64,000 nucleotides of DNA from positions 248,001-312,000 of the forward strand of contig NW_026931531.1 of NCBI RefSeq assembly GCF_032062105.1, in the 5' to 3' direction. The stretch is from Saccostrea cucullata (taxonomy: Eukaryota). Shown here in pieces: positions 3,201 to 57,000 of this stretch. The position numbers and the translations under genes are program-made. The notes below the pieces were generated by a model. That model was not told the DNA's origin. It made no database searches and saw nothing but the letters and a program-made list of their open reading frames with translations. Each line of letters begins with the position of its first letter. Positions within the stretch are counted from its first letter, which is position 1.

Positions 3201-5982
3201 GTATTTCGACCAATAGCTGCACGTTTTGGACTTCATTTTGAAGGTGAAATTAAGAGAAGGTTAGTGAAAATATTAAAGATGCACTTTTTTAAACTTGTTA
3301 CCACTGATCTTCCTTCAAATTTTCATTTTTCTTATACATGTATGCTGAACATCCTTCGCCATTAGACAAATCTAAGAAAACATAAAATTAGGTTTTCACT
3401 CATGTCTTCAGCTGTCTATAAGAAATTAGTCAATAAAATGATATACTTTAGATATCACATTTAATTAATTGTGACAATATTAAATAGCACTAATTGTTTA
3501 TATTCCATCATTTCTAATATTTAAGGCTTTCAAATAGATATTTTAGGAGAGATAATGTTTCTTTAAATTGTAGAGGTTTTTTTCCTAAGGGAGGGGGAGA
3601 GGTTCATGTAAAGGTTTCCCCCTGCTCCGGTCTACGTGGGGTCACAATGACAGATCAGGGCACAGTCACCAGGATATTTGGGCTCTCATTTGTAGCGGGG
3701 GTGCTTCCTAAAAAGGTATGGATAATAAATCAGTAATTAAATAAATTAGTTCTACAAATATAAACCACAACATTCACTAATTATGTAACTTTTCACATCT
3801 TAATATTTCATCGAAACATTGAAATCATCCACATTTTAGATTGAAAATATTAACAACCTACTAGTATCAGGACTTTCAGAAGTGTTTTTATCTGGACTGT
3901 TTGTTTAAAGACCTAGTTTTCTCATCATCCAGACTGATAGTGCCTATGGGCTTTCTAATCAAACATAACATGTAACATGAAACTTTAAAGATTCAAGAAG
4001 GAGGAAGATTGGCAGACAACTCTACACTCATGTGTATTGATATTCAATAACTTAAAGAAGATTTACCTCCCTTTATTGCTGCCATGAATGATATTCTCTT
4101 TACATTTGCTTTGATGCAATGTCTCTTATGAGTGTGCTACAAGTGACATATAGGGCCTAGAGATAGTTCACTTTAAGGCAGAGTGTGCTACAGATGTCAA
4201 ATAATTATTATATAGGTAGCTCACATTATGGCAGAGTGTGTTACAGATGTCATATATTTATTATATAGGTAGCACACATTATGGCAGAGTGTGCTGCAGG
4301 TGACATATATTTATTTTATAGGTAGCTAACATTATGGCAGAGTGTGTTACAGGTGTCATATATTTATATTATATAGGTAGTTCACATTATGGCAGAATGT
4401 GCTACAGGTGTCATGTAATTATTATATAGGTAGCTCACATTATGGCAGAGTGTGCTACAGGTGTCATATATTTATTATATAGGTAGCTCACATTATGGCA
4501 GAGTGTGCTACAGGTGTCATATATTTATTATATAGGTAGCTCACATTATGGCAGAGTGTGCTACAGGTGTCATATATTTATTATATAGGTAGCTGACATT
4601 ATGGCAGAATTGCTACAGGTGTCATGTAATTATTATATAGGTAGCTCACATTATAGCAGAGTGTGCTACAGGTGTCATATATTTATTTTATAGGTAGCAC
4701 ACATTATGGCAGAGTGTGCTGCAGGTGTCATATATTTATATTATAGGTAGCTCATATTATGGCAGAGTGTGCTACACGTGTCATATATTTATTATATAGG
4801 TAGCTCACATTATGGCAGAGTGTGCTACAGGTGTCATAAATTTATTATATAGGTAGCTGACATTATGAGAGAGTGTGCTACAGGTGTTGTATGTTTTTTT
4901 ATAGGTAGCTCATATTATGGCAGAGTGTGCTACAGGTGTCATCAAAGAACACTACAGAGGGGTCCCCATCAAGATAGACGTGTGTAAAGAATCTGAGGCA
5001 ATAGGAGTCGGGTGTGGAATTATGTAAGTGGCCATTCACAACTTTTCAATGTCATTATTAAGTTCTTATTCATAAAACGTTTCATTTTGTATGATGTCAA
5101 CTCTGTTACAATGTAATTAATTACTGACCTATTGTAGAGTTGTGGCAGAAACAAGCACTGGCTGTCTGCTGGCAGGCTCAGCTCTGGGGAAGAAAGGTAG
5201 AAATAAAGTAAAATGGTTGTATGAATTTCAAGCAATTTATTTGAATAAAAATACTTGCATTATTACTTGTATTATAATTCTGTTATCTTTAAATCCTCAA
5301 AAGGTAAGCCGGCTGAGAGGGTGGGGCAGGAGGCAGGGGACATGCTGATTAACAACCTGTATAATGGCGGCTGTGTCGACGAGTTTCTACAAGATCAGGT
5401 CAGAGGGAATATCATATTTATCTGTATAATCACATGGTATTTATTATTCCTTAACTTTCAGCAATTTTAACTTAAATAACATTCAAGAGGAGAACAACAT
5501 TCATTTGTAAGTTTGTTAAAATCATTCAATTTTATCTCTTTAGAAAATTGGACTTTAAACAGAGATTTTATTCATGATTTTCTCCCTATTTTTGGTGATC
5601 AGCTGATAGTTCTGATGGCAGTAGCTGAAGGGAAATCAGAAATCCTGTGTGGCCCATTATCCCTACACACTGAAACCGCCATACATGTTGCTTCATTGAT
5701 GACAAAGGCAAGCTCATGATATTTTGCTGCAAAAGTGAAGGAGGGGGGGTGTTAAAATGATTTATAAATGAAGATCAAATCTTATGCTTACAATTCACAT
5801 GTTTGATCAATATTTTAACTAGTTTTAGAAATAGAAAAATATGTGGGTTTTTTATTTACAATGGAACAAAACCAAGAAAGATTTTTTTATTACAGGCAAA
5901 ATTTGAAGTGCAAGAATTGACAAAGAATTCTACAATCATTAGATGTGAAGGAATGGGTTTAAAAGCTAAAGACAATAGTTGA
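261..5982 (+). CDS. RTCA: RNA 3'-terminal phosphate cyclase, 11 coding exons
   Basis: Exons 261-317, 571-671, 1218-1361, 1870-1993, 3201-3259, 3574-3715, 4905-5023, 5138-5196, 5304-5398, 5603-5707 and 5896-5982 join in frame. The translation has RtcA motifs [61 protein letters not shown] and LHTETAI (adenylated His). The last intron has a GC donor (AAG|GCAAGC at 5708). Confidence 0.95.
2308..2659. mobile_element. Non-autonomous DNA transposon (MITE) in RTCA intron 4
   Basis: Imperfect TIRs CCATCATCTCAAGCCACAG / CTGTGGTTTGCGACGATGG. Flanked by the direct repeat TGTAGAA (7 bp, or 9 bp GTGTAGAAC depending on where the end is placed). Confidence 0.7.
4126..4941 (+). repeat. 53-bp tandem array made of the RTCA exon 7 acceptor plus exon start (~15 copies)
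   Basis: Unit ATATTTATTATATAG|GTAGCTCACATTATGGCAGAGTGTGCTACAGGTGTCAT. The AG|GT recurs at 4216, 4269, 4322, 4377, 4430, 4483, 4536, 4589, 4641, 4694, 4747, 4800 and 4853; the functional copy is at 4905. Confidence 0.95.
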
Positions 5983-7223: not shown

Positions 7224-7875
7224 ACGATAAAAATTGATCATTTGGGAAGAATATAATAATTTATTCATCTAAGAATTTTGACTGGTGTAAATTTATCATA
7301 AAAATTTCGATTCCGTATTGTCATAAATTAGAAATTTTCAAAGATTTAAAATATTTATGCTTGTCTCAAATCGTTCATTTTGAAATTACTGGGTGTTACC
7401 GCATTTAATATTCGTGTTTTTTTTTTGTTTTTCAATTTGAAAGCCTAGAGCCTTCCAATTCTTTTACTTTTGCAGACAGGTCAATGTAAGGGACTTTTGT
7501 GGTTGTTGTTCGTTTGTGCCTAAAGATATATATTTTTTACTCTTTATATTTATTTATTTAACCAGCAACGTAATTTTATCTCATATAATCTAAGATTCGG
7601 ATGTCAGAGAATATATCTAAATATATTTCTGGAATTTTACGAGGTAATTGTAAGCATCTTATTCTTTATTTGACACATTTGGTCAATGAGTCACCAGGTC
7701 TTTGAAATGAAAACAAATGGAAGATATGAAAACAGCACCAGCAGCAAAAACAAAATTCCATATAATTGTAGTCAGAAGGCCATCTGCACCAGCGTCAATA
7801 AAACTCCCCCCTGCTTCCCTGTATCATAATTCAAAACACGCACGCACAACATCAACAGCTAGGGCATTCCCCGGC

Positions 7876-26759: not shown

Positions 26760-29700
26760 CAATTCGACATCACTTACCCTATCGGTGTCTTTGTTGAATT
26801 ATCTTACCTTCACATAGGTTTTTAAATGAAAAAAAAAACTCATCCTGATGGTGTCTTTGATCGAAGAATGTATACTGACGGTGTCTGCACGATTAAAATT
26901 GCCCTGACGATGTCTTGTCAAAAAATTATTCTGACGACATCTTTAATTTGCGAATGAAATTACCCTGATGGAGTCTTTGATAACAATTCCGATTGAGAAT
27001 TTCATTAAAACAACAACGGAGAACTCATCTTGACATTGTATTTAATGAGAGATCGTACCTTCACGGAAAACTGACCATTAAAGTGTTTTGAGAGAACTTC
27101 CTCTGACGATGATTTGATTATACATGTACTTTCTCTGAGAAGTTATTATTATGGTTCTTTGATGAGAACCTACGCTGACTATTTCTTTAATGGTGACGCG
27201 TTTCATTGACGTAGCCTCTGATCTGATTTTAAACTTACCATTACGATACCACTTATGTATAACTCACATCGACAGAGCCTATCATGAAGAACTTTTTATG
27301 ACCGTCTTTTAGCAAATACTTACCCTGTCAGTGACTTTGATCGGTCTAAACCTTTAAGATACTTTAGCTAAAATTAATCTCAGTGCTTCCGATGAGAAAA
27401 TTAATCTGATGGTGCTAGATAAAAAACCTAAATAGACAGTGTCTGTAACAGTTGCTGCCAGTGTCTTTATTGAAGAACGTTCTTGTAGGTATCTTTGAAG
27501 AGGGAACTTACTGTGACTGTATCCATGAAGAAAGAACTGATTATGGTGATGTTTTAATGTCCCGTTTTAGCATAAGATTTTTTAATTATTGTTAAGAAGA
27601 AGTTTTTAAATTAATTACATTTGAAATACTGGTATATAAAGATAACGAACATTATTCAAGCTCAATACGATATGGTGTCTGTGATGACAGAACGTATCCC
27701 AGCGGTTTCCTTCTTGAAAAATGTACCTTTATAATATTTTAGAAGAGAGAACGAATCTGACGGTGTCTTTGTTGAGGAAATATTCCCTTGTGGTGTTTTT
27801 GATGAGACTTTGGCAGCCTTTGATGGGAGAACGCGTTCTGAAAGTGCCTTTTATGATAGTTCGTACTCAGACTGTGTCTATAGTAAGAGAACGTATCCTG
27901 GTGGTGTTTTATATATAGGAAAATATGTTTTGAGAATCGTTTTGATAAGAGAACCTTTTCTTATTGTGTCTTTGATGAAAAAAAATTCCTAACGGCTTCT
28001 CTGATAAAATAATGTACCCTGGTTTCCTTAATAAAAAAAAAGAAAATGTTTGATGAGAGAACGTTCCCTGGTGATATCTTAAATGAGAGATATATCCTGA
28101 CAGTGTTTTTAGTGAGAATAAGTACCGAATCTTTGCTCAAAGAACGTATGTTGACGGTTTCCCTGATGAGAGAACGCGTCCTAACATTGTCATTGTTGGG
28201 AGAATGTATTTTGATGTCTTGTCTTCGATGAGATAAATTGTCTTTATGGTGTCCTTTCGAGAGAACGTATCCTGAACATTTCCCTTATAAGAGAACGTAT
28301 CTTGACGGTGAAATTGATGATGGAACATATTCTAACGGCGCATGTGATGGGAGAACCTGCCATGACAGACTCTTTGATAGGAAAACGTATACTGGTGTTT
28401 TTTTTTAATGGAGTACACACTTTGACGGTGTCTTTGATGGGAGATCGTATATTGACAGTATCGTTGGTGAGAAAGCGTATCCTTACGGTATCTTTGATTA
28501 GAATACATTCACTGACGGTGTCTTTGATGAGAGATCCTAATTTTTTTTTATAAGAAAACATTCTACTACGGTTTATTATTGAAAGAACATATGATGTTGT
28601 CTTTGATAAGTAAACATACCAAGTATTCTGAAGGTGTCCTTGTGTAGAGAACAAATTCCGACGGTATTTTTGATGACAGAAAATATTTTTATGGTGTCTT
28701 TGATGAGAAAACATTTCCTGATGCTGTATTTGATGAGACCATTATATCCTGCCGGTGTCATTCATGACAAAACGTATCCTCCTTACGATGTCCATGATGA
28801 GAAATTCCCACATGTTGTCTTTGATGAGAGAACTATCCTAACTGTGTCTTTCATAAGAGACATTTCCCTTACATATATGATATAGGAAGCAAGTAATGAG
28901 TGAGTTTTCTTTTCATGGAAACGGCACGACGGTTCTAGTGTTTTTTTTATATATAAAAGAAATAGTCTTTTCGGTGTGACTGCCCTTTAAAAGAGATCCA
29001 ATCACGAAAATGTCTTTGATGAGAGAACATATCCTGATGGTGCCTTTGTAGAAAGAACGTATCCTTATGGTGTCTTTGATGAAATAACGTAACTAGGTTG
29101 TGTCTTTGATGACAGAACGTATCCTGATAATTTCCTAGATGAAACAAACGTTAACCTGAATGAATTCTTGATAGGCGAATGTCCTGATGCTCTTTTTGAC
29201 GAAAAAATAGTCCCTACGCCGTGTCTTTTATGTGAGAATGTATCCTGACAGTGTCTATGATGGATTAACGTATCCTGATGATTTCTTATTCTGACGGTGT
29301 CTTTTATTGAAGATTAAATCTTGACACTGTCTTTTATAAGAGATAATACTGTATTCTGATGGTGTCTTCGATGAGAGAATGTATCCTTGTATATTAGATC
29401 TTTGATAAGAGAACGTGTCCTGGTGGTGTTTTTGATGAGAGAACGTATACATACTAACGGTGTCTTCGATGAGAGAATGTATTCTGACGGTGTCCTTGAT
29501 AAGAGAATGTACCTTGCAGTGTTTCTGATGGGAGAACGTATTCTGACGGTGTCGCTGATTAGAAAACGTATCCTGACGGTGCCCTTGGTGAGAACGTGTC
29601 CTGACGGTGTCCTTGATGAAAAAAGTATCCTGACGGTGTCTTTGATGAGAGAGATTGTATTTTGACGGTGTCTTTGATTAGAGAACATATTCTGACGGTG

Positions 29701-32700
29701 TCTTTAATGAGAGAACATGTCCTGACGATTTCTTTGTTAAGAGAACCTATCCTGACGGTGTCTATAATGAGAGAACAAAATCTGACGGTGTCTTCGATAA
29801 GAGAACGTAGCATGACGCTGTATTTGATAAGTGAACATGTTCTGCTGGTGTCTTTGATGAGATAACGTGTCCTTACCCTGTCCCTGATGAAATAACGTAT
29901 TCTGACGGTGTCTCTGATTTGTAAAGTGTATAGTGACGTATCTTTAATGGGAAATAATATTCTTATGGTGTCTCAGATGAGAGAACGTGTCCTGACGATG
30001 CCTTATACAAGAAAACGTATTCTGACGTTTTTTTATGAGAGAACGTATCCTTCCGGTATTTTTTATATTGTGTCGATATCTTTAATGAAAGAACGTATCC
30101 TGACGGTATCTCTGATAAAAGAACGTATCCATTCGGTATCTTAAATGAGAGATTATATCCTGATGGTGTGTTTGATGTGAACGTATCCTGACGGTGTCTT
30201 TGATAAGAAAACGTATCCTTACGGTGTCTTTGATGAGAAAACGTATCCTTACGGTGTATTTTATGAGAAAACCTTTTCTAACGGTGCCTTTTATGAGAAA
30301 ATGTATCCTGACTGTGTATTTTAAGAGACCACGTATCATGACGGTGTTTTTAATGAGAGAACGTGACCTGATGGTGTCTCTAATGAGAGAACGTGTCTTG
30401 ATGGTGTCTAAAATGAGAGAACAAAATCTGACGATGTCCCTGATGAGAGAACGTATCATGACGGTGTTTTTGATGAGTGAACGTATCATTGCGGCATTTT
30501 TGATGTGAGAACGTATCCTTACGGTATCCTTGATAAGAAAACCTTTTTCTGACGTTGTCTGTAATGAGAAAACGTGTCCTTACTCCTACTGGTGTCTTTG
30601 ATGAAAGGAACGTATCCTGGCGGTGTCTTTGATGAGATAAAGTATTCTAACGGTGTCTCTGATGAAAGAACGTATCCTGACGGTATCTTCAATGGGAAAT
30701 ACAATTCTTACGGTATTTTTGTGAGAGAACGTGTCCTGACGGTGTCTTTGATCAGAGAAAGTATCCTGACGGTGCCTTTGGCAAAAAAAGGAACTGGTGG
30801 TGTCTTTCATAAAAGAATGTATCCTGGGGTGTCTTTGATGAGAAAAGGTATTCTGAAGGTGTTTTCGATGGGAAAACGTATTCTGTTGGTGCCTTTGGTG
30901 AGAAAATGCATTCCGAAAGTTTCTTTGATGAGAGAACGAATCATGACGGTGTCTTTGATGAGAAAACGTATTCTGACGTTGTTTTTGATAAGAGAATGTA
31001 TCCTGACTGGTGAGAGAACGTATACTGACGTTGTCTTAGAAGAAGGAACGTATCCTGACGGTGTCTTTAATTAAAGAATGTATCCTTACGTTATCTTTTA
31101 TGGGAGAGTATATCATGACGTTGTTAGTGTCTTTGTTTAGAGAACGAATACTGACGGTGTCATTGATTAGAAAACGTATCTTGATGGTGTCTTTCATGAG
31201 TGAACGTATTTTGACGTTGTCTATAATTAGAAACGTATCCTGGCGGTGAGTCTGATAAGAGAACGTATTCTGACGGTGTCTTTGATGAGAGAGCGTATCC
31301 TGACGGTTATTAAACTTATTCTGACTGTGTCTTTGATTAGAAAAAGTGTCCTCTTGATATCTTTAATTGAAGATTGTATTCTGACGATATCTTTAATGAG
31401 AGAACCTGTCTTGACGGTATTTTTGATGAGAGAACGTATACATGCTAACGGTGTCTTTTTGAGAAAAAGTATTCTGACGGTTTCTTTGATGAGAGAACGT
31501 ATCCTTACGGTATTTTTGATATTGTGTCAGTATCTTTAATGAAAGAACGTATCCTGACGGTATCTCTGATGAAAGAATGTATCCATACGGTATCTTAAAT
31601 GAGAGATTATATCCTGATGGTGTGTTTGATGTGAACGTATCCTGACGGTGTCTTTGATAAGAAAACGTATCCTTACGGTGTCTTTGATGAGAAAACGTAT
31701 CCTTACGGTGTCTTTGATGAGAAAACGTATCCTTACGGTGTATTTTATAAGAAAACCTTTTCTAACGGTGCTTTTTATGAGAAAACGTATCCTGACTGTG
31801 TATCTTAAGAGACAACGTATTCTGACGGTGTCGTTGATTAGAAAACGTATCCTGACTGTGTCCTTGATGAAAAAGTATCCTGACGGTGTCTTTGATGAGA
31901 GAGATTGTATTTTGACGGTGTCTTTGATTAGAAAACATATTCTGATAGTGTCTTTAATTAGAAAACGTATCCTGACGGTGTCTCTTATGAAAGAACATGT
32001 CCTGACGATTTCTTTGTTGAGAGAACTTATTCTGACGGTGTCTCTAATGAGAGAACAAAATCTTACGGTGTCTTTGATAAAAGAACGGGTCCTGACGGTG
32101 TCTTTGATAAGTGAACGTGTCCTGGTGGTGTCTTTCATGAGAGAACTTTCCTTATGCTGTCCCTGATAAAATAACGTATTTTGACGGTTTTTCATATATA
32201 TTAAGTGTATACACGTATATACTATGTGTATAATGACGGTATCTTTAATGATAGATAATATCAATATGGTGTCTCGGATGAGAGAACGTGCCCTGACGAT
32301 GTCTTTCATAATAAAACGTATTCTGACGGTTTCTTTGATGAGAGAATGTATTCTTACGGTATTTTTTATATTGTGTCGGTATCTCTAATGAAAGAACGTA
32401 TTGTGATGGTATACGTATCTCTGATGAAAGAATGTATCCATACGGTATCTCAAATGAGAGATTATATCCTGATGGTGTGTTTGATGTGAACGTATCCTGA
32501 CGGTGTTCTTGATGAGAAAAAGCATCATGACGGTGTTTTTGATTTTTTGAACGTATCCTTACGGTATTTTGATGAGAGAAGGTATTCTGACGGTATTTTT
32601 GAAAAGAAAACGTTTTTTCTGACGTTGTCTTTAATGAGAAAACTTGTCCTTACTCCTATTGGTGTCTTTGATGAAAGGAACGTATCTTGGCGGTGTCTTT

Positions 32701-34843
32701 GATGAAATAAAATATTCTATAGGTGTCTCTGATGAAAAAACGTATCCTGACGGTATCTTCAATGGGGAATTATATTCTTACTGTATTTTTGATGAGAGAA
32801 CGTGTCCTGACAGTGTCTTTGATTAAAGAACGTATCCTGATGGTGTCTTTGATGAGAAATCGAATCCTGACGAAATCTTTGATTAGAGAACGTATTCTTA
32901 CGGTGCTTTTGGTACAAGAACGTATTCTGGTGATGTCTGATAAGAGAATTTATCCTAGGTGTCTGATGAGAAGGTATTCTGAAGGTGTTTTTGATGAGAA
33001 AATGCATTCTGACAGTGTTTTTGATGAGAGAGCGAATCACGAAGGTGTCTTTGATGAGAAAATGTATCCTTACGTTGTCTCTGATGAGATAACGTATACT
33101 GACGGTGTCTTTGATGAGAAAACGTATCCTGACCGTGTATTTGATGAGAAAACATATCCTGACTGTATCTTATGATAGAACGTATCCTGACGGTTTGTTG
33201 AGAGAACATGTCCTGACGGTGTCTCTAATAAGAGAACGATATCTGACGGTGTCTTTGATAAGTGAACTTATCCTGTCTTTGTCTTTGATGAGAAAACGTA
33301 TCCTGATTGTGTTTTTGATATTCTGGCGGTGTCTTTGATTAGAAAACGTGTCCTTACTTCTGGCGGTGTCTTTGGTGAGAGATGGTATTCTGACAGTGTC
33401 TCTGATGAAAGAACGTATCCTGACGGTATCTTTCATGAGATTTTATATCTTTACGGTATTTTTTTTTTATGAGAGAACGTGTCCTGACGGTGTTTTTGAC
33501 AAGAGAACGTATCCTGATGATGTCTTTGGTGATAAAACGTATTCTGAGGTGTCTTTGAAGCGAGAACATATCCTTACGGTGTCTTTATAGAAGATGATAT
33601 CCTGACATTGTCTTAAATGAGAGAACGTATCCTGACAGTGTCTTTGATGAGAAAACGTATTCTGACGATGTCTTTGATTATAGAAATCCTGACGGTGCCT
33701 TTTGAAAAAAAATGTATTCTGATGGTCTTTGATTATAGAATGTATCCTTTGTGTCTTTGATGAGAAAAGGTATTCTGACGGTGCCTTAGGTGAGAAAATG
33801 TATTCTGAGAGTGTCTTTGATGAGAGAACATATCCTTACGGTGACTCTGATGAGAGAACGTATACAAATGATGTCACTGATTAGAGAATGTATCCTGACG
33901 ATGTCTTTGATGAGACAACGTATCTTAGGGTGTCTTTGATGAGAAAAGGTATCCTGGCAGTTTTTCGATGAGAAAATGTATTCTGACGCTATCTTTGACA
34001 ATGGGACTTAATTACTCTGACGTGTCTTTGAAAGGAGAACGTACCTTACAGTATCTTTGATGAGAAAACGTCCATTCACAGTTTCTTTACTCGGAAAAAA
34101 CCCCACCACATCCTGATATATCTCTGAATTAAAATTTACTTTGACGGTCTCATTGATGAAATGATGAACCATTTCTTCAATGACAGAACTGAAGATGATT
34201 TGAGTGTTTTACTTTGAACCTATTTGTCACCATATAAACAATACTTTTATTAGATATATCTTACCTTGACGGTGTATTGAATAAAATAATTTATAACATT
34301 CATCACTGTAAATCATCAATTTTCTATATCTTCACCTTTTAAACCTTTATCTTAATGGCGTCTTTCATTTGATAACTTACCAAGTCAATATCTGTGTTGT
34401 ACATGTTTGCCTTAGCCTGGTGGTGTCTTTAATGTAGAACTTATCCGATGATCGCCGTTGAGAAAACATACCCTGGTGTTTGTCTGATCAGAGAACTTAT
34501 CCATACGTACGGTGTCTCGATTTAAAAAAAACTTACCCTGATAGTGTTTTGGGGTGCCTTTGATATATAACTTGATTGTTGAAGTATAGATTATAAGTAT
34601 CAATGACTTTGAAAGTAGTGATTATCTGTTAATACTTTATTTTAACTTTGTCTTTGACATTGGTGACTGTCTTTCAGAACTTGCTTTATCGTTGTCTTTG
34701 ATACCTGCCTGGTACTATCTGTTAATTAGTACTTATTTTGTCGTTGTCTATGATCCTATTGGCTTTTTTGTGTCTGATAGGTCTTAACACCAAGGGACTG
34801 GGCAAATACTTACGGTTCAGTTGTCATTAAAAGAAATGCTTAC
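26760..34843. repeat. ~8-kb 30-bp minisatellite (~270 units), consensus GATGAGAGAACGTATCCTGACGGTGTCTTT, lying inside the distal intron of the LRR gene
   Basis: 30-nt periodicity, seen in the ORF track as 10-aa repeats MRERILTVSL / IKDTVRIRSL. Homogeneous core, degenerate edges and internal block duplications. Confidence 0.95.
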
Positions 34844-34927
34844 CCTACCAGTATCTCTGACGCTAGAGTAGTCGGTTTTTGTTCGTTCTTTCGATCGTCT
34901 CTGTTTTCTCGGTCGTGATCTCTGACT
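34844..34927 (-). CDS. Putative alternative penultimate exon of the LRR gene (SQRSRPRKQRRSKERTKTDYSSVRDTGR)
   Basis: Acceptor CATCTTTTAG, donor AGG|GTAAGC, 84 nt, phase 0-0. The C-terminal KTDYSSVRDTGR matches KTDYSSIKDTDR of exon 36472-36404. Confidence 0.75.
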
Positions 34928-35816: not shown

Positions 35817-38800
35817 TCATGTGCCCTCTCGTGATAGTTCTTTTGAAGCAAACTGTAACAGCTGAAAATACGCAAAGTAAGGAAGACAGGTGAAATGCGT
35901 TGTGAACACAACGAAATGTCTATCCTTTTGTTGTGTTAAAAATAATGAATTTACTAATTGGAGTAAAATTCTAAATATACAATATTGCATTTGTTGCGAA
36001 TATTTGAATACAGTTTGTGGCTTTGACGTAAAAATGCAGAATTAAAGCATATTTATTTATTTCTATCGACATTTTTTTTAGTTTTTGTAAACAAATACTA
36101 GTATGTTTTAAAATATAAGGATATTATATTTGAAATATTTAATTAATTTCTCAATATTCATTCCAAGGTACTTACATGTGTATATATATAATGATTATAT
36201 AATGAATGCTAATTTGCCTGACTATTTAACTTGCCATTGTACAACTTTGGCATATGCAAAGGAGATAATTGAACAAATAGGAAACTGCTATGGTTTTTTT
36301 TTTATTTGTAACACATTTCATGAATATTTCTCCATTGAAATGAAACAAAAGCTGTTTAAAGTTGCTATTCAGATAATATTTTATATTAATGACATACACG
36401 TACCCTGTCTGTGTCTTTGATACTGGAGTAGTCTGTCTTTGGATGGTGGTGGTGATGGTGGTGTTTTCTCCCCTACAAACCAAAATTTCAAACCAGTCTA
36501 AAGAAACTGCTAACTGGATTCTAGGGTATTATTCGTTTTGTTAGAGCCAAGAAATAAATAGTTTGCCTGAGGTCATTAAATTGAAGGCAACCAGATTGAT
36601 ATGATAGATTAAAAAAAATGTACCAGTATTTGTCTAAGAGCACATTCAATAATTTTGTTTTGTTTTGCTGTTCATGGATTCCAAGATGTAAATTTCTGTA
36701 CAATTTATTTTGTTGCAGGCAAACATCAACAAATTCAAATTAAATAAGATTGATCTCACAAGCAGCATAAAAAAAATGTTACAGCAGTCCAATATCTCAT
36801 CATGTTATACCTTTAAAAATGATTTTCTTATGAATAAATCCTTGATATAAGGTCTAAAAACAAACTTTAAAGGTGTAACAATACAAACTGTAAATCTTTA
36901 TAGTAATGAGGATGAACTTTGGGTGTATTTAGGTATCTAGACTGACCTGCCAGACCTTCCCGTGGGGTGTCCCGATGCTGTCTCGGATGTGATCTCTCTG
37001 GACCCCTGACGATTCAGTGGCAGATAAATTGTCCAGATATCTGAACATACAAATAATCAAACATTCTGAAATATTAATTGCAATATCCAAGTATATAGAT
37101 AATCTGGATGGTCCTTGATAAACAAATGCCTCACCTCAAACAAGCTTCCAGGTCTGTCTTTAACTTCTCCTCATAATCCAGGTATTCATTCTGTAGACTC
37201 CTGTCGTTAACATTCAGAAAAAAACAAGTCAAACATTAATATCCAGATCAAAGCCCTAAATAACACTTAAAATGTATGTATCTTTAAATTTATATCTGCA
37301 CCAAAGCAGAGTGCTACTACAGATAACATTAAGCCATACACAATCCTCCTTTGTAGGAAGTTGATGTTTTCGTCCATCTTAGCTCTGGATTCTTTCATGC
37401 GTTCTTCGAATGCCTGTTTGGCTGCGTCTTTTAAAGCGTTGATATTCTGAATGTGTCGACTAGCACCAGGATCGTGTTCTACCTGGAACAAAGATTGTCA
37501 ACCAGCATACAATAAAATCTTATCTAGTTCATTAGAGTTAGGGCTAGAAAATTTACAACTGGGAATATTTCCATCTCTTGTTCATGTACTCACACTGACT
37601 GTTGGTTTAGGTAGTGGACGGACTGCTATATTGTCCAGGGTTTTTATGCTGGTTTCCTTTAGGATGTCAGTCTGGTACATTCTATCTCTTTCTATTGGGT
37701 TACCCTTCAAATGATTAGTATATTACAGTAATTTTATTGTTAGAAATAAAATTTGTTACCAAAATATAGATAAATTAGCAAATTAATGAAACAGTGAATA
37801 AACTGTATAGAGACAAAGTATTTGTACATATTTTAACTCTCATGGGTACTAAAGGGAAAAAAGGGGAAAAACTGTTGCCTTACATGTAGAGAGAGAACAT
37901 CCAGCCTCTTCAGTTGACCTAGGACCCCCACAGCATTGTGAAGGGAGTGGATTCTGTTACCAGACAGATTCAGGATCTGTAGATGGAAGCAGCTGGTCAG
38001 GGGAATCATTTCTGTCTGGAAGAATAACAATGAAAAGATTAACATCCAAAAATATTGTAATGTTTCATGGAAATTTCAAAGGTCATCTAAGTTTGCAATG
38101 TTTAAGATTACTTTGACTTACAAGTTACATTTCCTCGCTTCTAATTCATACATTCATCTTAATTACCTGGTCATGTAACCGCTTTGTACCTACCACTTCA
38201 TTCCTTTGTGCGTACAATTCTCGTAGTTGTGGTAATGCTTGTACACCATCCAGGGACTTGATCTACAAAAAAATATAGCTATACATGTATTTATCTATTT
38301 CCAATCATTTTGTTGATTATATTATTTTGAAGAAGGAGAGAACAATAACTCATTGCACCATTTTATAATAAAATAAATCATGGCATTCTAACATTTTTAA
38401 TGTTAAAAAAAAAATATTTCATTTAGTTATATCTAGTTTATTTGCCAAAAAATATTAGTACTTATTTAGATTCCTTTGGACTGCAGTACAAGACAGAAAT
38501 AAGTTTTACACCAAAGTGTATACTGATACCTTATTATTATTCAGGTTGAGGATCTGCAGGTTCATCATGCTTGGCATGTATGATATATCTTCCAGTTCGT
38601 TCATGCTTAGATTCAACTCAACCAAGGAACTACTTCTCACAAGGTTCTCAATTTGAGAGATAGAATTGTGGGATAAATTCAGTGAATACAACTTTTTACA
38701 CACCTCTATACCTATGAACCTGAAATAACAGAAAATGGCTAGGTAGGATAAAATATAGTATATCAGTTAAACTTGTGAGGAAGCATGCAGTTATAAACTG

Positions 38801-39785
38801 GATGTTTTATTCACATTCATTGATGGCTGTTGTATAAAATTTTCCCAAATTTGAACATCATTGTGTGTTTTTGATTTAGCTGATTTTGACTTGGGCTTCT
38901 GAAGCAAAAAGTTTATGCTATGAATACGGATCAATATTAAATTTTCATGATTTCAAAAATAGAGCAAAAAATAAAACAATTCATTTATATTCATTGTATA
39001 TCTTTATAAAAACATTTTTCATATAACATTCCTCATGTTCCTGTTTCCATGAAAAGGGATTAATTAAATATTCATACTTACTTGTTTATTTTGTTCAGTG
39101 ATGCATTCAGTTCTCGTAGATTCTGAAAAGGGAGGAAACTCTCATGCTCTAAGGAAGACAACTCATTTAAGGATATGTCCATCTTGAGGATTCGAGAGGG
39201 CATGTCAATCACAGAGGACAATCTGGCCTGGGGTTCTCTGTTAGAAAGTTTGGTTTTACAGTAACAATGATAATTATAGTAGACACTCTCATTTGAACAT
39301 ATTAGATTAAACATTAAAATACAAAATATATCAAAATACAAAATCTCCCGACTTGAATATTTAAGATTTACATAGACCAGTTCTGGCACCTAAGGCATAT
39401 AAAGTATGAAGTACCACGCTAAAAAGGAACTAAAAGTCGATACATGACATTCTTGAAGAAAATAATTCTCTATTAGGCCTATTATAAAGATTACTTGAAT
39501 AATGTGTATCAAAAATTAATAACCTTTCTTTAAAATATCAATAGAGAAGTGGACTGCCTTTTGAAATGCCTTAAGTCAATAGCGTGTCCAACTCTCTAAA
39601 GTGAATGAATCAATCTCAAACCTTTCATCTCCCCAGTGGAAGCTGAACACAATATCTCTCAGCTGGCACATCTTTAAATCTAGCTCATAGTTACCACCCT
39701 TTGTTTCTACTCCCCATTCGGCAGGTTGTAAAGTGAGGGGATGAATTCTTCTCTCTACAAAATCTTGTGTCAGTTGCTTAGCCAT
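35817..39785 (-). CDS. Leucine-rich-repeat protein (SDS22-like LRRs, LRRcap, C-terminal coiled coil, His tract)
   Basis: Exons 39785-39622, 39237-39082, 38719-38530, 38262-38194, 38015-37884, 37704-37594, 37482-37340, 37200-37135, 37040-36947, 36472-36404 and 35861-35817 join in frame. LRRs LRELNASLNKI, LYSLNLSHNSI, LVELNLSMNEL, LQILNLNNNKI, LQILNLSGNRI, and cap LSLHGNPIER..Y...IKTLDN. Confidence 0.88.
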
Positions 39786-40894: not shown

Positions 40895-43800
40895 ATGTCT
40901 ACCCCAGTTACAGAGGCTGCTAACCCAATCACAAAGAACATAGATGTAGCCAGTCCATTAGGTACATGTAAACACTAATTATCAGTTTGCTGTGCCTTAT
41001 CAACAGTACCTGACATTGTTTTAAAGTACATTTTTTCTCTTTCATTTAGATATAGTTTCTTTGCTTCACAAATGTGATCAAGAAATATTTGAAGGTTGGA
41101 ACCAGTATAAAGTAAGTTGCAAATAATTTCTTATATGTATAATAATACAGCATTGGAATTTATATTTAACGCCTTAACGTTTAGGAGACATATATTAAAG
41201 GTATTAGAAAAATTTCTCATGATAAATGTCAAGTTCTTGAAATGTTCTTTATTTTCAGAATTTATTTGATGCAGATGTGTTGGCAACCTTAGACAAATTA
41301 ATTAGTGTTGCAGCCTCTATTATTGAGGTTTGTTTAGCAAGTTTATCACATAGATCCCTTGTCATTGAAATACATTTATTTTTACCAATAACATTCTCTA
41401 TTTGATTGACTTTATCTCAAAATGGAGGATCCTGAACAAAATGTTGAATGCATAACATGACTGAATTTTATTTTTCAGAATCCTGCTACAGGTGCTATAG
41501 TATTAAGTGGCTGTGGAACATCCGGCCGGATTGGTTTTATTACGGCAGTAAGTTAACTTGTTCCATTATTATGAGAATTCCAATGATGACTATTTAGAGA
41601 TGATGACAGCTGTCACTCTTTGTTACAGAGGACTTTCAATGCAAAGCTGTGTGAATTGTCCAGACTGCCATGTTTCAAATACCTTATAGCAGGGAGAGAC
41701 AAGTAAGAACGCCACATACAAATGGACAAGGAACCATTATTAGTTCATTGGATTTTCACTGTGATCTATAATAAATCTTGTCATTTCATTTTTATATCAT
41801 AACAAGGACTCTAATTTCTAGATGTAGATTCCCTTTATTTACCTGATTGTAATTATTTTCTGTGTTGGATTCAGAGCCCTGTTTACTTCCCAAGAGGCCC
41901 CCGAAGACGACCCACAATGTGGAGTGGAAATGCTGAAGGAGGTCTGTATATAGAGTCAGCTACATGCTTTAAAATATAAGGACCATTGTTTTGTAATCCA
42001 ATGTAAAATTCTTGATTTATTGCCAGGCAACAGTTGGGAAGAAGCATGTGCTCTTTATTGGCATAACATGTGGGTTGTCTGCCCCTTTTGTGGGAGGACA
42101 GCTTCAGTATTGCTTGGACAACCTAGATGTGTTCACACCTGTAGTTCTAGGATTCAATCCCACCCATCAAGCAAGGTAAAGTCAGGTGATATCTGGATAT
42201 CTAGATGTGTTCACACCTGTAGTTCTAGGATTCAATCCCACTCACCAAGCAAGGTAAAGTCAGGTGATATCTGGATATCTAGATGTGTTCACACCTGTAG
42301 TTCTAGGATTTAATCCCATCCATCAAGCAAGGTAAGGTCAGGTGATATCTGGATATCTAGATGTGTTCACACCTGTAGTTCTAGGATTCAATCCCACTCA
42401 CCAAGCAAGGTAAGGTCAGGTGATATCTAGATGTGTTCACACTTGTAGTTCTAGGATTCAATCCCATCCATCAAGCAAGGTAAGGTCATATGATATCTAG
42501 ATGTGTTCACACCTGTAGTTCTAGGATTCAATCCCACTCCTCAAGCAAGGTAAGGCCAGGTGATATCTAGATGTGTTCACACCTGTAGTTCTAGGATTCA
42601 ATCCCATCCATCAAGCAAGGTAAAGATTAGCTGAGAGAAATTAAACAGCTGTGAATTAAGTGCTACAGGCACAAAAAAATATTTTTTGAAGCTCATTCTC
42701 CTTTGCTTGTTGTTGAAGTAATGTCAATGTTCTGGACTGCATATGAAAACAAAATTGGTGTTGTGTGACCATGTACTCTTTTTTCTCTTCTTTTAGAAAT
42801 AATCCAATAGAAAAATGGGATTCCACTTTTTTACAAGGCAAGTTTTAAGCGAAACATGTCAGACAAGCTATCCGTTGTAGATGATCACCAGAAACAACCC
42901 AAATCTGAATAGAATTTAGAAGAAATTGGTAATTAAGGTACAAGTGGTTGTCACAATATTTTTTTTTCCTTGCAGTGGTGAACAAAATGGAAGAAATGAA
43001 AGCCTCCTCTAAAGTGTTTATCCTGAATCCTGTTGTGGGGGTATGATATTTCTAAGTGTAAACAAACCTGTGTTTCTCAGAAATAACATATTGCAAATTA
43101 AAGCATTAATTTTTCAGTTTATTCGTTTCTTTTTTTATCTTAGCCAGAGCCCATCACTGGATCTAGTCGAATGAAGAGTGGGTCAGCAACGAAAATCCTT
43201 TTGGAGACAATTTTTGCCGGTGCTACATTGTCCGTTCTGCCTGTGGAGAGACCTTGGTAAGTACTTGTGTATTCATCTGGATGAAACATGCTAAGGATTC
43301 ATTACTTATTGTGAATTGTAACTGGTCCTTGTTTATTCAATTTGTTGGTTCTGAACTGTTAACGATAGCTTTTAGTTAATGTTTATATGAATGATTTTTT
43401 AGGCAGACAGAACCCTTCCTTAGGTGCTATCAAGCTGTATGTAATCATATTTATACCAAAGAAAACACAACAAATATTGCTCAGATGGTAGAAATGGCAG
43501 GAAATAGGTATGTATTCAGTACTGGAATTAAATTACCAGTATTTAAATAAATGATTCCTCCAAAATAATGACTTTATTTTTTCTCCAGTTTAAGGTCTAA
43601 CGGCAGTATATACTACGTGGGTGAGGACACGCTAGGAATCATGGGAATGATTGATGCTTCGGAATGTCCCCCTACTTATGGATCTTGTTAGTTTCTCTTC
43701 TCTCACAATTTTCTTAGGTAAATTTTCTTGATAAGAATTTTTTCGTGGGCCATAGAATTTTACAAGATAACTTGAACTATTTTAGCTCTTTCGGATGTTA

Positions 43801-46607
43801 GAGGATTTTTGGACCAAGGCTACAAAGCTTTCAGGAACAATGATGGAGACCTCAGCTTACTGGTGAGTTCATCTTTAATAGCCATTCTCTGTAAGCTTTT
43901 AAACTCTTAGTGTGTATAGGTGTATGCAGGTAAATGTTTCAGATAAATTTAAAAATGTTACAAAATTATAAGATTTTCATAAATGCAACTTTTAAAAATA
44001 GGTCAAAAATCTCTAAATTAAAAATTAAATGTGGATGTTTAATCACCATGCTTACCTATCCATGCCCTACCTTTTTGCAAAAATTTGATTTTTTTAAGCT
44101 CTTGTAAATTTTACATAATTTTTTTATGTAAGAATTGTTGTGCAATAACCTTGAACTTAGATCATTTAGAAAATCAATGCCAATGACATTTTCATTATTA
44201 TGAATTATAACCTCAATATTTTACACTCCTAGGTAGAGAATTTGGTTGCTTAATTAATTGTTTTTAAATATTTCCTTATTTATTTTCAGGGTAAACACTT
44301 TCAGATATCATATAACGATATGAAGAAGGACATTCTACCTTTTGTGAAGCCCTCTGATCTAGTCATTTACTTATCTCAGAGTAAGTACTTGTCACTTTAA
44401 GGAAGCTGAAAATATATTTTTTAATTTTATTTAAAATGAATGTATTTTGCTGTAAGGTAAAAGGAAAAATGACTTTGAAGATAAAGTTTCCAAATTATAT
44501 TCAAGTAGTATTGTACATGTACACTTAACCTATAAGGAAAAAGAATTATTCCAATCTAAACTTAATTTGCTTATTTATTGAGAAAACAGCTTTTACTTCC
44601 ACCTTTAAGATGAAAAAAAACTTTGCCTTTTTTATTAAAATCAGAATGTTTTAAAGTTACAAAAGCAAAAAAGCATAATATACACCTACCGGTAGTTCAA
44701 AAATTCACAATATCTTATACCGTAAATCTGGAAATTTTTGCCGTAGATTAATTTTTAGCAAAGTTGCGAGTTCATTGCATTCGCAAAAATATTTTTCTTA
44801 AAAATAAATTACCATAAGAAAATGTGAACAAGCAGTTGTCATTTACAAAATGTTGAAACGTAAAAATTAATCAACGGTATTTTGACCCGAATTCGCAAAA
44901 TAAAATCGACGTAAAAATTTCCAGATTTACGGTAATCACAAATGTCCTAAAAATTGTACATTTTTTAAAACATAATAGAAAATTCTTCATAAGATTTACT
45001 ACACTGTTTCATGATTTCTGAACTTCAATAAGACTTTGATAGCGATTTTCAATTTTATTTATCAAAATGTTTCCATGATGTTATCAAAAAGTTCTCCAGA
45101 TATTAACGTAAATTGTATATAGCCTTGGACATGTTCTGTATCAAATGAATTCTTAACTTTTTACATTGGAAGTGTATATTGTATGTTTTTCTTCATATAA
45201 ATGCCCAATACCTAGAAATATGGATTTTTCAGATGGTAAAATTGATGAAACAATGACAAAGTGCCACTGCAAGAAAGCCCTTATTTCTTTTGCCAATAAT
45301 TCCTCTACTGTAAGTATAATAAACTCATCTGAGCATGAAACATCTCATCCTGTAGTTTAACAATTCTCAATCTCTGTTTATTTCCTCATCTTCAGACAGC
45401 AGATTTTATGCTTATCATAAAAAAAACTCTTCAAACTTATTCAAACTTTTTGAATTCAATTCTTCATCAAACTGAAGTTTTTCTTTAATGACAAAGTTTT
45501 GAGTTTGTTTTGAATGATAGATGACTTTTCCAGAGTGATAAGATGGATGTTGAAGTTAAGATTTTGCTGCCAAGAGAGGAGTTAGTGTCCCTGATTGGCG
45601 AGGGTGCTGTGGACCAGTTCCTGATGTTGTTTGAGGAGATCAGCATTAAGTGGATCTGTAACGCCATCACAACAGGTGCACACATCCTCAAGGGGAAAGT
45701 CTTCCAGAACATCATGGTGGACCTCAAAGTCAGGTGAGCACAGTCTTCTACACAATATGTCAGGTTTCTGTTAAACTACCAGTACATGTTAACTTACACA
45801 CCTCGTATTTGAGTTAACTGAATTGCTCTTCACCACAACTGCTAATCAGTAATACATTGTACATAGAACTCCAATTTTTACAGGATTTACAGTCATGCAT
45901 TATGTAACAATTATGTTATATACAGTATATTGAATCTGAAAATTGACGTTATTTTGAATCATTGTCTAGTAAAGTAAAAAGTTGACATAATGAAACATTA
46001 TTTCTATTTCTGTTTCCAGCAATAACAAGCTTTTCCACAGAGCCATTGGCATTATACAGGTTTGTTTCTAACTCGTATCATTTGAAACAGTTTCATCTAG
46101 AGGTTTTATCAAATGTGTGAAAAACTGAAAATATTATTTAGAGAAAAAACACTTTCTTGCATGTGAAATGTCATTGAATTAATGTACAATGCTTCAGTCA
46201 GTGGCTCCTTTTTGCTGGTCCTACTTTATTACATTTCCTGTTTTAGAGGTTCTCAGGACTGTCCACAGAAGAGAGTAGGGATTACCTGCTCCAGTCTATT
46301 TATAGCACAGACAGCCTGACGGAGGATGTCAGAAGTTATAATATATCTAGTCATATAGAAACCGCTACACCTCTATATCAGGTACAGTATAACACATTGT
46401 GTATGTACCCTAAATCTGAAAATTTATGTCAATTTCTGCAAATTTTGGTCAAATTGGTATCTGTTAATTTTGTAGGTTGTACCTCGAGCTCTGCTGTCGG
46501 CCATTTTACACTGCAGTGTGTCAGAATCCCAGAAACTTTTAAACAATGAACCAGTGATACAAAGGGTTATATCTCAAACACTGTCGGGACTACAGAATAA
46601 CAAATAA
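40895..46607 (+). CDS. GCKR: Glucokinase regulatory protein-like (two SIS/MurQ repeats)
   Basis: Exons 40895-40961, 41050-41111, 41259-41327, 41479-41547, 41629-41702, 41875-41941, 42027-42175, 42797-42837 (GC donor), 42976-43040, 43144-43256, 43403-43507, 43589-43686, 43786-43862, 44290-44380, 45233-45309, 45534-45733, 46020-46059, 46247-46381 and 46476-46607. Motifs PVTEAANPIT, LSGCGTSGR, GITCGLSAPFV, GPEPITGSSRMKSGSATKILLE, DASECPPTYG, TTGAHILKGKVFQNIMVDLKVSNNKLF. A probable 5' UTR exon ends near 40478. Confidence 0.93.
42123..42625 (+). repeat. 78/70-bp array of the GCKR exon 7 end plus donor (7 copies)
   Basis: Unit CTAGATGTGTTCACACCTGTAGTTCTAGGATTCAATCCCAYYCAYCAAGCAAG|GTAARG. Donors at 42176 (functional), 42254, 42332, 42410, 42480, 42550 and 42620. 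Confidence 0.95.
44720..44932. mobile_element. Tc1/mariner-type MITE
   Basis: TIRs CCGTAAATCTGGAAATTTT / AAAATTTCCAGATTTACGG with TA TSD. Confidence 0.8.
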
Positions 46608-46950
46608 AACTGTTACATCTCAAACACTGTGGGGACTACAGAATAAATAAAACTGTTATATCTCAAACACTGTCAGGACTACAGAATAACAAATAAAATT
46701 GTTACATCTCAAACACTGTCAGGACTACAGAATAACAAATGAAACTGTTACATCTCAAACACTGTCAGGACTACAGAATAACAAATGAAACTGTTACATC
46801 TCAAACACTGTAACTACATGTGCAAACAGGTTTGAGATGTAACAGTTTCATTTGTTATTCTGTAGTCCTGACAGTGTTTGAGATGTAACAGTTTCACTTG
46901 TTACATGTATTCTGTAGTCCAAACAGGTGTGAGAGGTAACAGTTTTATCA
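46566..46950. repeat. ~46-bp array of the GCKR last codons, stop and AATAAA, followed by inverted copies
   Basis: TGTTACATCTCAAACACTGTCAGGACTACAGAATAACAAATAAAAC occurs ~6 times direct (46566-46812), then ~3 times as reverse complement (46829-46950). Confidence 0.9.
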
Positions 46951-54000: not shown

Positions 54001-57000
54001 GGAGACTAATGCATATACACTTATACAGTGCTAATGCAATCAAATGAGAAGTGTCAATTAATTCAACATCTGATTTAATCATCATATAACAAAATTTTCT
54101 AACGGTAAACACATTTTATCATATCTTTAAATCAAAAAGAATTTATTTACCTGAACTTCTGAAGTCAGTGTTACATTAATATGTATGGGTGAGACAAACT
54201 GGACATCCACCACAAAGTTTTTGTTCCACTTGGAGAATTTACCCTGGATATCAAACTGTCCAACTTTCCAAGAATCAAACTTCCCAGCAATACCAAATGT
54301 CATATCCATCGGAATAAAAGAGATCTACAAAATAATTATCAATATGAATCCAGATTCCCACAATTTAATGTTGGGTACAAAAAAAAACTACCATTATAAT
54401 GCTTCTTTATAAAAATCTCTGTTCATTATAAATTCAACACTTTTATTTCCAACAAGATGTGTTTGTGAAACACTATGCGCCCAGCGGCAACAAAGTTAAA
54501 AAAAAAAATATTTTAAGCATATAGGTCACAGTCAAGGTCACAAGGTAATTGATCTTGGTATCATTTGAAAGAACTTGATCAGTGAAGTATGCACACTAAA
54601 TATGAAGTTTCTATCTCTTATAGTTAAAAAGTAATGGTGAAGGTTCAAAAAAACTATTTTTAGCATATAGGACACAATCAAGGTCACAAGGTCATTGACC
54701 TTGGTGTCATGTGAAAGGCTTAATTAGTGGTGTATGGATATGTCTCTATCTTTTATGGTTCAAAAGTTATGGCGAAGGTTAAAGTTCGCAGAAAAAATTA
54801 TTTTTAGCATAAAGGTAACAGTCAAGGTCACAAGGTCATTGAACTTGGTGTCATTTAAAAGAGCTTAATTATTCAATTATGCATACCAAATATGAAGTCT
54901 CTCTCATTCATGGTTCAAAAGTTATGGCGAAGGTTAAAGTTTGCAGACAAACAGACAAACAGATAAACAGACAAACAGAACAAAAACAATATACGCCTCG
55001 GATCTTTCGATCCGGGCGCATAAAAACCTTAATAATCATGCAATCTTTGAATGCTTCAACAAAATTGATTGAATCTGTGTCAGATTATATATTGTTATTA
55101 CATGTTGTATTAAGTTTCGGCTAATCTTACTTTCACCATTTTCTATGCACCTAACCTTATATTCAATATCCCAGCTCGGCTTACTGAGTTTACTAACCTG
55201 ATCTCTCCTCTCTATCATTATTTTCAATCTTTTCTGCTTACCTCACATTTAACGACTTCATCTCAGCTTTACCTTGTTATAAACTTTCTTTACTCAGTTT
55301 AACCCGCATTCCAAAGCTTCCCCCTTCTTACTTCACTATAAGCAATTCCTGCTCTACCTAGAGTCCTAGTTCTGCTTACCTTGCTTTGAATGGTTCCGCT
55401 GTGATTGAGGAATGCTTTGGAATGGTTTCCTTTGATTGTAATATTGTGTCTGGATGTCCAGTATGAGTTGGAGTATCCCAAGATAATATCCACAAGGTAT
55501 TCCTGCGATTGATCAGTTGAATTAAGAACTACAGTATCTGTAATAAGAAAAAAAAATCAATTACCATTAATGTATTCTAATACTGTGTATTATTTTATGC
55601 CCTTTTAATGAAAGACTATTTATATACATTATAAATGAAGGATTCAAACAAAAATACTTTGAAAATTCTATTTAATATACACTGAAGTTGTCTTGTTAGA
55701 AACATAGAGACAATGCCCCTACAGGGCAAGGAGAAATTATTCAATCAATTGACACATAATGTCAATAGTTGCTTAATAATGAACTATAAGTTGTCTAGAA
55801 CATGAATGATACTTTACTGTCTGTCTGATAGTCGAGGAGCTTCCATGGAGTAACTTGGTGGGCTCTGAATATCACTGTCACAGTCTCGTTTTTCTTCTTC
55901 TGATCTTGTAGCTTCCATTCTTGTTTTTTCAGTGAGATTTGATTGGACATGTTGAAATTCCAACTGGGTTGCACAGTATTTGTAATATTTAAGGAAGAAC
56001 TTAATTCACAATCTTCAAAATAAATCTGTTTGGCAAATAAGTTGATATCTGCAGTAACAGATGCATCTAAGTCCTCTCTGGAGACATCAAATTCCTTCTG
56101 TCTTCCATACAGTAAACTTGAGTTGAACCAATGCCTACAAATTTCAAAATTTTGTTAAAACTAAATCTATATATTTAGTAATTCTTTGAATTTGATCAAT
56201 ATTAACCATCTCAAAGATGAATTAAATATCAAATATCAGAGATATATCAAAGTAAGCTGACAGGCCTAACAGTTCAGTCAAACCTGGGTATCAGAGATAT
56301 CTCAAAGTAAACTGACAGACCTAACAGTACAGTCAAACCTGGGTATCAGAGATATCTCAAAGTAAACTGACAGACCTAACAGTACAGTCAAACCTGGGTA
56401 TTAGAGATATCTCAAAGTAAACTGACAGACCTAACAGTACAGTCAAACCTGGGTATTGGAGATATCACAAAGTAAATTGAAAGACCTAACAGTACAGTCA
56501 AACCTTGATATCAGATATCTCAAAGTAAACTGACAGACCTAACAGTACAGTCAAACCTTGGTATTAGAGATATCTCAAAGTAAACTGACAGACCTAACAG
56601 TACAGTCAAACCTGGGTATTAGAGATATCTCAAAGTAAACTGACAGACCTCAAAGTAAACTGAGTTTAACTGACAGACCTAACAGTACAGTCAAACCTGG
56701 GTATCAGAGATATCTCAAAGTAAACTGACAGACCCTAACAGTACAGTACAGTCAAACCTGGGTATCAGAGATATCTCAAAGTAAACTGACAGACCTAACA
56801 GTACAGTCAAACCTGGGTATTAGAGATATCTCAAAGTAAACTGACAGACCTAACAGTGCAGTCAAACCTGGGTATCAGAGATATCTCAAAGTAAACTGAC
56901 AGACCTAACAGTACAGTCAAACCTGGGTATCAGAGATATCTCAAAGTAAACTGACAGACCTAACAGTGCAGTCAAACCTGGGTATCAGAGATATCTCAAA

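What the first reader, a model, noticed from the sequence alone, without database searches (positions are those of the whole stretch)
26760..34927. An 8-kb 30-bp satellite appears to be a ~270-fold amplified exon-end/5' splice site of the LRR gene
Seen in sequence: the minus-strand unit ATCAAAGACACCGTCAGGATACGT(TCTCTC) matches the LRR exon junction ATCAAAGACACAGACAGG|GTACGT (36421-36398) at 21 of 24 nt. The array starts immediately after the donor of the paralogous exon 34927-34844 (GTCAGAGATACTGGTAGG|GTAAGC) and ends ~260 bp before the next exon at 26503. Degenerate units at both edges still carry the donor (plus-strand CTTACCCT near 26772, 27319, 34532, 34839, i.e. AGG|GTAAG). In the homogenised core the +1 G has become A (AGG ATACGT). 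Inference: the satellite has a traceable origin in a splice junction, and large expansion was tolerated only for a splice-dead variant. The core resembles the proximal exon's junction (21/24) more than the adjacent exon's (about 15/24), so the order of events is not settled.
Basis: partly seen in the sequence, partly recalled or inferred. Interest (0 to 1): 0.85.

Follow-up and report, generated by a model that had tools for sequence, protein, structure and literature searches.

The report
Oyster splice-donor minisatellite ("mirage")
In a rock oyster, the last 18 bases of an exon plus its splice signal have been copied about 280 times into the next intron; this is a very large, old example of a known and probably harmless repeat type, and the sister species shows that the copies did not have to lose the splice signal in order to multiply.

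Summary
Observation confirmed. A 30-bp array of about 280 unit-lengths fills window 34843-26620 (minus strand). In 1.17 Gb the only match outside it (3 or fewer mismatches) is the exon junction at 36421-36398.

Corrections. (1) The annotated LRR gene (Saccostrea cucullata, XP_062570885.1) stops at 35817. The array lies in the intron of a duplicated exon pair (B 34927-34844, U 26503-26450). That pair is conserved in five oysters, under purifying selection, with a 295-709 bp array-free intron outside Saccostrea. (2) S. echinata has the orthologous array, about 165 units, with consensus donor AGG|GTAAGT: GT in 71 of 135 units, 13 perfect donors, +1 G decaying like other G positions. Donor death was not required for expansion; the +1A core is a later S. 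cucullata-specific expansion of one sub-block. (3) The source exon is unresolved (24/30 for A, 23/30 for B), but the array is in phase with B's donor.

It belongs to the junction-reiterating minisatellites (human F7, CBS, IFI6; amphioxus "mirages"). The scan has already noted several others in this genome. No RNA evidence was obtained.

The parts
26620..34843 (-). 30-bp junction-reiterating minisatellite, about 279 unit-lengths; unit = 6-nt spacer + 18-nt exon-end copy + 6-nt donor copy
34071..34843 (-). Proximal old edge, colinear with the S. echinata array; GT kept in 5/12 scorable units; first pseudo-donor exactly 30 nt after the real donor (34813), preceded by an in-frame TGA in both species
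27700..34070 (-). S. cucullata-specific core, about 215 units, +1 A in 87% and +4 C in 68%; higher-order duplications of 85-95% identity (offsets 855, 1454, 2071, 2279 bp); every 200-bp piece best matches one S. echinata block (L027 about 19810-20290)
26620..27699 (-). Distal old edge, roughly colinear with S. echinata L027 22400-24030; intact AGG|GTAAGT donors with the G at 27323 and 26777
34844..34927 (-). Exon B (84 nt, phase 0-0), duplicate of exon A; its donor is the first in-phase monomer of the array
26450..26503 (-). Exon U coding part (17 aa + stop), duplicate of terminal exon T; RefSeq joins the orthologues of B and U in Crassostrea/Magallana
36404..36472 (-). Exon A, penultimate LRR exon; its end plus donor is the only genome-wide match to the unit outside the array (21/24)
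35817..35861 (-). Exon T coding part: true terminal exon of the annotated LRR protein, with stop codon
35560..35603 (-). AATAAA plus GT-rich tract, conserved in S. echinata: probable LRR poly(A) site, upstream of exon B (inferred from sequence only)
35817..39785 (-). LRR gene coding span (412 aa, XP_062570885.1; conserved across molluscs and some other lophotrochozoans; automatic names PPP1R7-like or internalin-like)

Best explanation
A locus-specific minisatellite of the F7/CBS/'mirage' kind. On the Saccostrea stem a 30-bp piece spanning the end of a KTDYSS..DT.R exon and its GTAAGT donor was tandemly duplicated into the B-U intron and grew to 100 or more units with live-looking donors (shown by comparison). 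After the split from S. echinata one small, relatively donor-poor block expanded again to about 215 units in S. cucullata, and a G-to-A change at +1 rose with it (shown). Growth was by slippage or unequal exchange, which leaves the edges old (inferred from block duplications and colinear edges). The spliceosome most likely uses the first, authentic donor and removes the whole array, as shown experimentally for human F7 (inferred here; not shown for oyster). On this reading the +1A core is mostly a founder effect, not a precondition for expansion.
For: Locus-specific and the junction is the only outside match. Sister consensus differs only at +1 and +4 and has a perfect donor. Period in register with exon B's donor in both species. 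Array absent from the 295-709 bp orthologous introns of O. edulis, C. virginica and M. gigas. Edges colinear, core traced to one block. +1 G retention 0.70 versus 0.74 at other G positions, +2 T 0.81 versus 0.86 in S. echinata. Exons B+U under purifying selection despite the arrays: pN 0.016, pS 0.32, p = 5e-5. Two further independent junction repeats nearby. Precedent: PMC1557585, PMC3087553.
Against: No RNA data: neither the B-to-U splice nor silence of the pseudo-donors is shown in Saccostrea. In both species the most consensus-like units are donor-poor (S. cucullata core 0/193 strong donors; S. echinata block 0/23, and GT in 2/12 of units at 17/18 or better), which is what weak selection against live donors would give. 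The seed exon (A or B) is not resolved.
Confidence: 0.75

Rival explanations
1. Same origin, but selection filters the array: units with strong donors are tolerated only in moderate numbers, and donor-dead variants expand preferentially (weak form of the first reader's idea).
For: Two separate younger expansions are both free of strong donors, by different changes: +1A in S. cucullata, +2A or +4C/T in the S. echinata block. The S. cucullata intron has 3 perfect pseudo-donors in 8.3 kb against 13 in 6.4 kb.
Against: The two expansions share a founder block, so they are about one event. S. echinata's latest 105-bp duplication carries GT units and differs in copy number between its two assembled copies. 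Donor bases decay at about the background rate. In F7, downstream donors do not compete.
Confidence: 0.15
2. The array has a function: a ladder of in-frame donors or U1-binding decoys that regulates inclusion of the B+U tail, yields truncated tails, or protects the long intron from early polyadenylation.
For: Kept in two species whose LRR genes differ at about a third of synonymous sites. Period is a multiple of 3. An in-frame TGA precedes the first pseudo-donor in both species.
Against: Three other oyster genera keep B and U without it. The donor was lost from the S. cucullata core. About 45% of core units are not 30 nt long and all frames carry 89-123 stops. Units are about 20% diverged from the consensus, as expected under drift.
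Confidence: 0.06
3. An unrelated dispersed satellite or transposon fragment, or an assembly artefact, that resembles the junction by chance.
For: None found.
Against: No copy elsewhere in 1.17 Gb or in metagenome contigs. Both junctions rank first and second in three genomes. Internal duplications are only 85-95% identical and an independent assembly of a sister species has the array.
Confidence: 0.02

Closest known systems
Human F7 intron 7 37-bp VNTR (Borensztajn 2006, PMC1557585)
   Same: First monomer spans the exon-intron boundary; the donor is reiterated downstream in one intron; locus-specific.
   Different: 5-9 near-identical copies versus about 280 diverged copies; the F7 unit is mostly intron (4 exon nt), here 18-24 of 30 nt are exon-derived; F7 pseudo-donors were tested and are silent, here untested and mostly mutated.
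Human CBS intron 13 31-bp VNTR, IFI6 (6-16) intron 2, LMNB2 and PDGF intron repeats (as cited in PMC1557585)
   Same: Same architecture. [quoted passage not shown]
   Different: 10-25 copies; CBS and IFI6 use the nearest two pseudo-donors. I read these only through the citing paper.
Amphioxus 'mirage' minisatellites in Adh3 and globin genes (PMC3087553)
   Same: Invertebrate; tandem copies of an exon-intron boundary; 10-160 bp units; many but not all keep the splice signal; cluster edges excluded from homogenisation.
   Different: The globin mirages have 3-6 units. This one is far longer, predates a species split and has two layers with different donor states.

Membership tests
Junction-reiterating minisatellite (F7-type / mirage) | Head-to-tail tandem array of 10-160 bp units | tested here: met
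   30-bp period, about 279 unit-lengths
Junction-reiterating minisatellite (F7-type / mirage) | Unit is a copy of an exon-intron boundary of the host locus | tested here: met
   Junctions A and B rank 1 and 2 outside the array in three genomes; exon A exceeds the maximum of 1000 shuffles
Junction-reiterating minisatellite (F7-type / mirage) | First monomer is the authentic junction, array in phase with it | tested here: met
   Next GTAAGT lies exactly 30 nt after exon B's donor in both Saccostrea species; the first few units are strongly degenerate, and sequence alone does not exclude exon A as the seed
Junction-reiterating minisatellite (F7-type / mirage) | Locus-specific, not dispersed | tested here: met
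Junction-reiterating minisatellite (F7-type / mirage) | Copies carry splice signals, many but not all intact | tested here: met
   GT in 71/135 units in S. echinata and 14/224 in S. cucullata
Junction-reiterating minisatellite (F7-type / mirage) | Array is spliced out; authentic or nearest donors are used | not testable with these tools
Indirect only: purifying selection on B+U and RefSeq B-U joins in Crassostrea/Magallana
Junction-reiterating minisatellite (F7-type / mirage) | Copy-number variation between alleles | tested here: inconclusive
   The two assembled S. echinata copies have 164 and 169 units; whether they are alleles is not known; only one S. cucullata copy is available
Dispersed satellite DNA or transposon-internal repeat | Same unit at many unlinked loci | tested here: not met
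Coding tandem repeat | Open frame maintained through the array | tested here: not met
   89-123 stops per frame; longest open stretch 282 codons

The most novel reading that the evidence does not exclude
Saccostrea has a lineage-specific process that seeds tandem repeats at exon-end/donor junctions (three independent cases within about 16 kb here), and selection on splicing then favours donor-dead sub-lineages in later expansions, so that these arrays record selection against decoy 5' splice sites unit by unit.
Probability: 0.15. Interest if true: 0.6.

Novelty: new member of a known kind. Interest (0 to 1): 0.3.

Why it matters
It is a satellite whose seed, approximate age and layered growth can be read from the sequence: absent in three oyster genera, shared by two Saccostrea species, re-expanded in one. 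The pair of species is a natural comparison of a 6-kb intron with many perfect decoy donors against an 8-kb intron with few, which could test 5' splice-site choice in an invertebrate. It does not reveal a new mechanism, and similar arrays are already noted elsewhere in this genome.

Tried and rejected
Search for an LRR isoform ending in B+U: the O. edulis exon B frame found nothing; a profile search found only the separate Crassostrea/Magallana gene and genomic fragments. The upstream proline-rich micro-exons of that gene were not found in the window, O. edulis or S. echinata; a genome search with it was blank and uninformative. Alignment A1 misplaced the U rows and was not used. One exon block in the dS script was out of frame and is excluded by hand (65 changes in 202 synonymous sites, pS 0.32, JC dS about 0.42). 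A unit tree was not built: 30-nt units at 20% divergence carry too little signal, so block matching was used. Ongoing concerted evolution with the exons was tested and not seen. The original IFI6 paper is not held; no divergence date for the two Saccostrea species was found.

Full report
1. The observation. The array is real. TRF reports periods of 30, 60 and 90 over 29351-34071 with 65-68% neighbour matches. Wrap-around parsing extends it, with fading identity, from 34843 to about 26620: 279 unit-lengths, 215 in a core at 34070-27700. In the whole 1.17-Gb assembly the 24-mer has 57 matches at 3 or fewer mismatches: 56 in the array and one at that exon junction; the reversed-pattern control gave one. 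A profile of the core scores the junction at 24.1 bits; 1000 shuffles of the flank never passed 19.0. GT at the donor position occurs in 9 of 31 edge units and 5 of 193 core units. The core is only 82% identical to its consensus and contains block duplications of 85-95% identity, so it is neither very young nor an assembly artefact.

2. The host. The exons match XP_062570885.1 of Saccostrea cucullata, a 412-aa LRR protein conserved across molluscs. Its coding sequence ends with exon A (36472-36404) and exon T (35861-35817, stop), followed by a conserved AATAAA and GT-rich tract at about 35603. The array therefore lies behind the annotated gene. It fills the intron between exon B (34927-34844) and exon U (26503-26450), which are old duplicates of A and T. 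B and U are present in S. echinata, Ostrea edulis, Crassostrea virginica and Magallana gigas. Between the two Saccostrea species they show pN 0.016 and pS 0.32, p = 5e-5, so they are very likely coding. In Crassostrea and Magallana RefSeq/UniRef models join B to U as the end of a separate micro-exon gene. I found no such micro-exons in Saccostrea or Ostrea; there B+U may be an alternative LRR tail, which is inference.

3. Comparison with relatives. The B-U intron is 709 bp in O. edulis, 295 bp in C. virginica and 355 bp in M. gigas, with no unit in it. In S. echinata it is 6.4-6.6 kb and holds 164-169 units plus a 1-kb insertion. The two consensus sequences differ only at donor +1 (G versus A) and +4 (A versus C), and the S. 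echinata one reads AGG|GTAAGT. Both edges of the S. cucullata array are colinear with S. echinata, clearly at the proximal end and more weakly at the distal end, while every 200-bp piece of its core best matches one block of roughly 15 units. So an array with live-looking donors existed before the species split (LRR pS 0.32, dS about 0.42, from the in-frame rows), and the +1A core is a later expansion in one lineage.

4. The selection claim. In S. echinata GT survives in 71 of 135 scorable units and the intron has 13 perfect AGG|GTAAGT pseudo-donors. Retention of +1 G is 0.70 against 0.74 for other G positions; +2 T is 0.81 against 0.86. The latest duplication there, a 105-bp block present in two or three copies, carries GT units. 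Expansion to well over 100 units did not need a dead donor. A weak form survives: the most consensus-like units in both species lack strong donors (0 of 193 and 0 of 23). These two sets share a founder block, so they count as about one event and cannot separate selection from drift.

5. Which exon seeded it. Against the ancestral unit, exon A matches 16/18 in the exon part and 2/6 in the spacer; S. echinata exon B matches 13/18 and 4/6. With the ancestral donor the totals are 24/30 and 23/30. The profile ranks A first in S. cucullata and O. edulis but B first in S. echinata. I lean to B but cannot settle it. Species-specific exon substitutions are not reflected in the arrays, so there is no sign of ongoing exchange with the exons.

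6. How it most likely works. Shown: junction origin, restriction to Saccostrea among the genera examined, two-layer growth. Inferred: growth by slippage or unequal exchange, and removal of the array by splicing from the authentic donor. [quoted passage not shown] Any use of a downstream donor here would include an in-frame TGA in the first repeat and lose the 17-aa tail. The array is not coding.

7. What is known. Minisatellites whose first monomer spans an exon-intron boundary are described in human F7, CBS, IFI6, LMNB2 and PDGF, with 5-25 copies (PMC1557585), and as 'mirages' in amphioxus Adh3 and globin genes, where edges escape homogenisation and splicing appears normal (PMC3087553). I found the F7 paper by my own search; the term 'mirage' came from an earlier scan note and I checked it in the paper. 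Every structural feature that could be tested is met. Earlier notes list at least eight similar findings in this genome (unchecked by me), and I found two more cases nearby: the GCKR-like exon repeat at 42123-42625 and the S. echinata exon A repeat.

8. Verdict. A real, very large and old member of a known kind. What is special is its size, the two-species record and the contrast in donor state. Interest 0.3.

Noticed in passing
window 42123-42625 (+): A second junction repeat: about 7 copies of 70-78 bp covering the end of a GCKR-like exon and its donor; also repeated in S. echinata (L027 about 7300-7700), single in O. edulis, C. virginica and M. gigas.
   Followed up: partly
L027 16860-17131; L028 16457-16600: S. 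echinata has a separate young 70-bp repeat of exon A's end plus donor, 4 copies in one assembled copy and 2 in the other, carrying S. echinata-specific substitutions; absent from the window.
   Followed up: yes
window 34927-34844 and 26503-26450; L029 18705-22945; L036 8001-11715: Exons B+U end a separate annotated proline-rich micro-exon gene in C. virginica, C. angulata and M. gigas. In Saccostrea and Ostrea the micro-exons were not found, yet B+U are under purifying selection, so they may be an unannotated alternative LRR tail. Pinctada shows no such duplicate in the 877 bp before the fasciclin gene.
   Followed up: partly
L029 22594: The exon B donor in C. virginica is GC rather than GT.
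   Followed up: no
L027 21343-22305: A roughly 1-kb unrelated insertion, probably a transposon remnant, splits the S. echinata array.
   Followed up: no
L027 and L028: The whole locus occurs twice, inverted, 3 Mb apart on one S. echinata contig: uncollapsed haplotypes or a segmental duplication.
   Followed up: no
window 4164-4942, 46566-46818, 56234-58644: Other tandem arrays (53 bp x 15, 46 bp x 5, 55 bp x about 44), 89-93% matches; not checked for exon anchoring.
   Followed up: no
L026, L027, L029, L030, L034: Gene order GCKR-like, LRR, fasciclin is conserved from oysters to Pinctada.
   Followed up: yes
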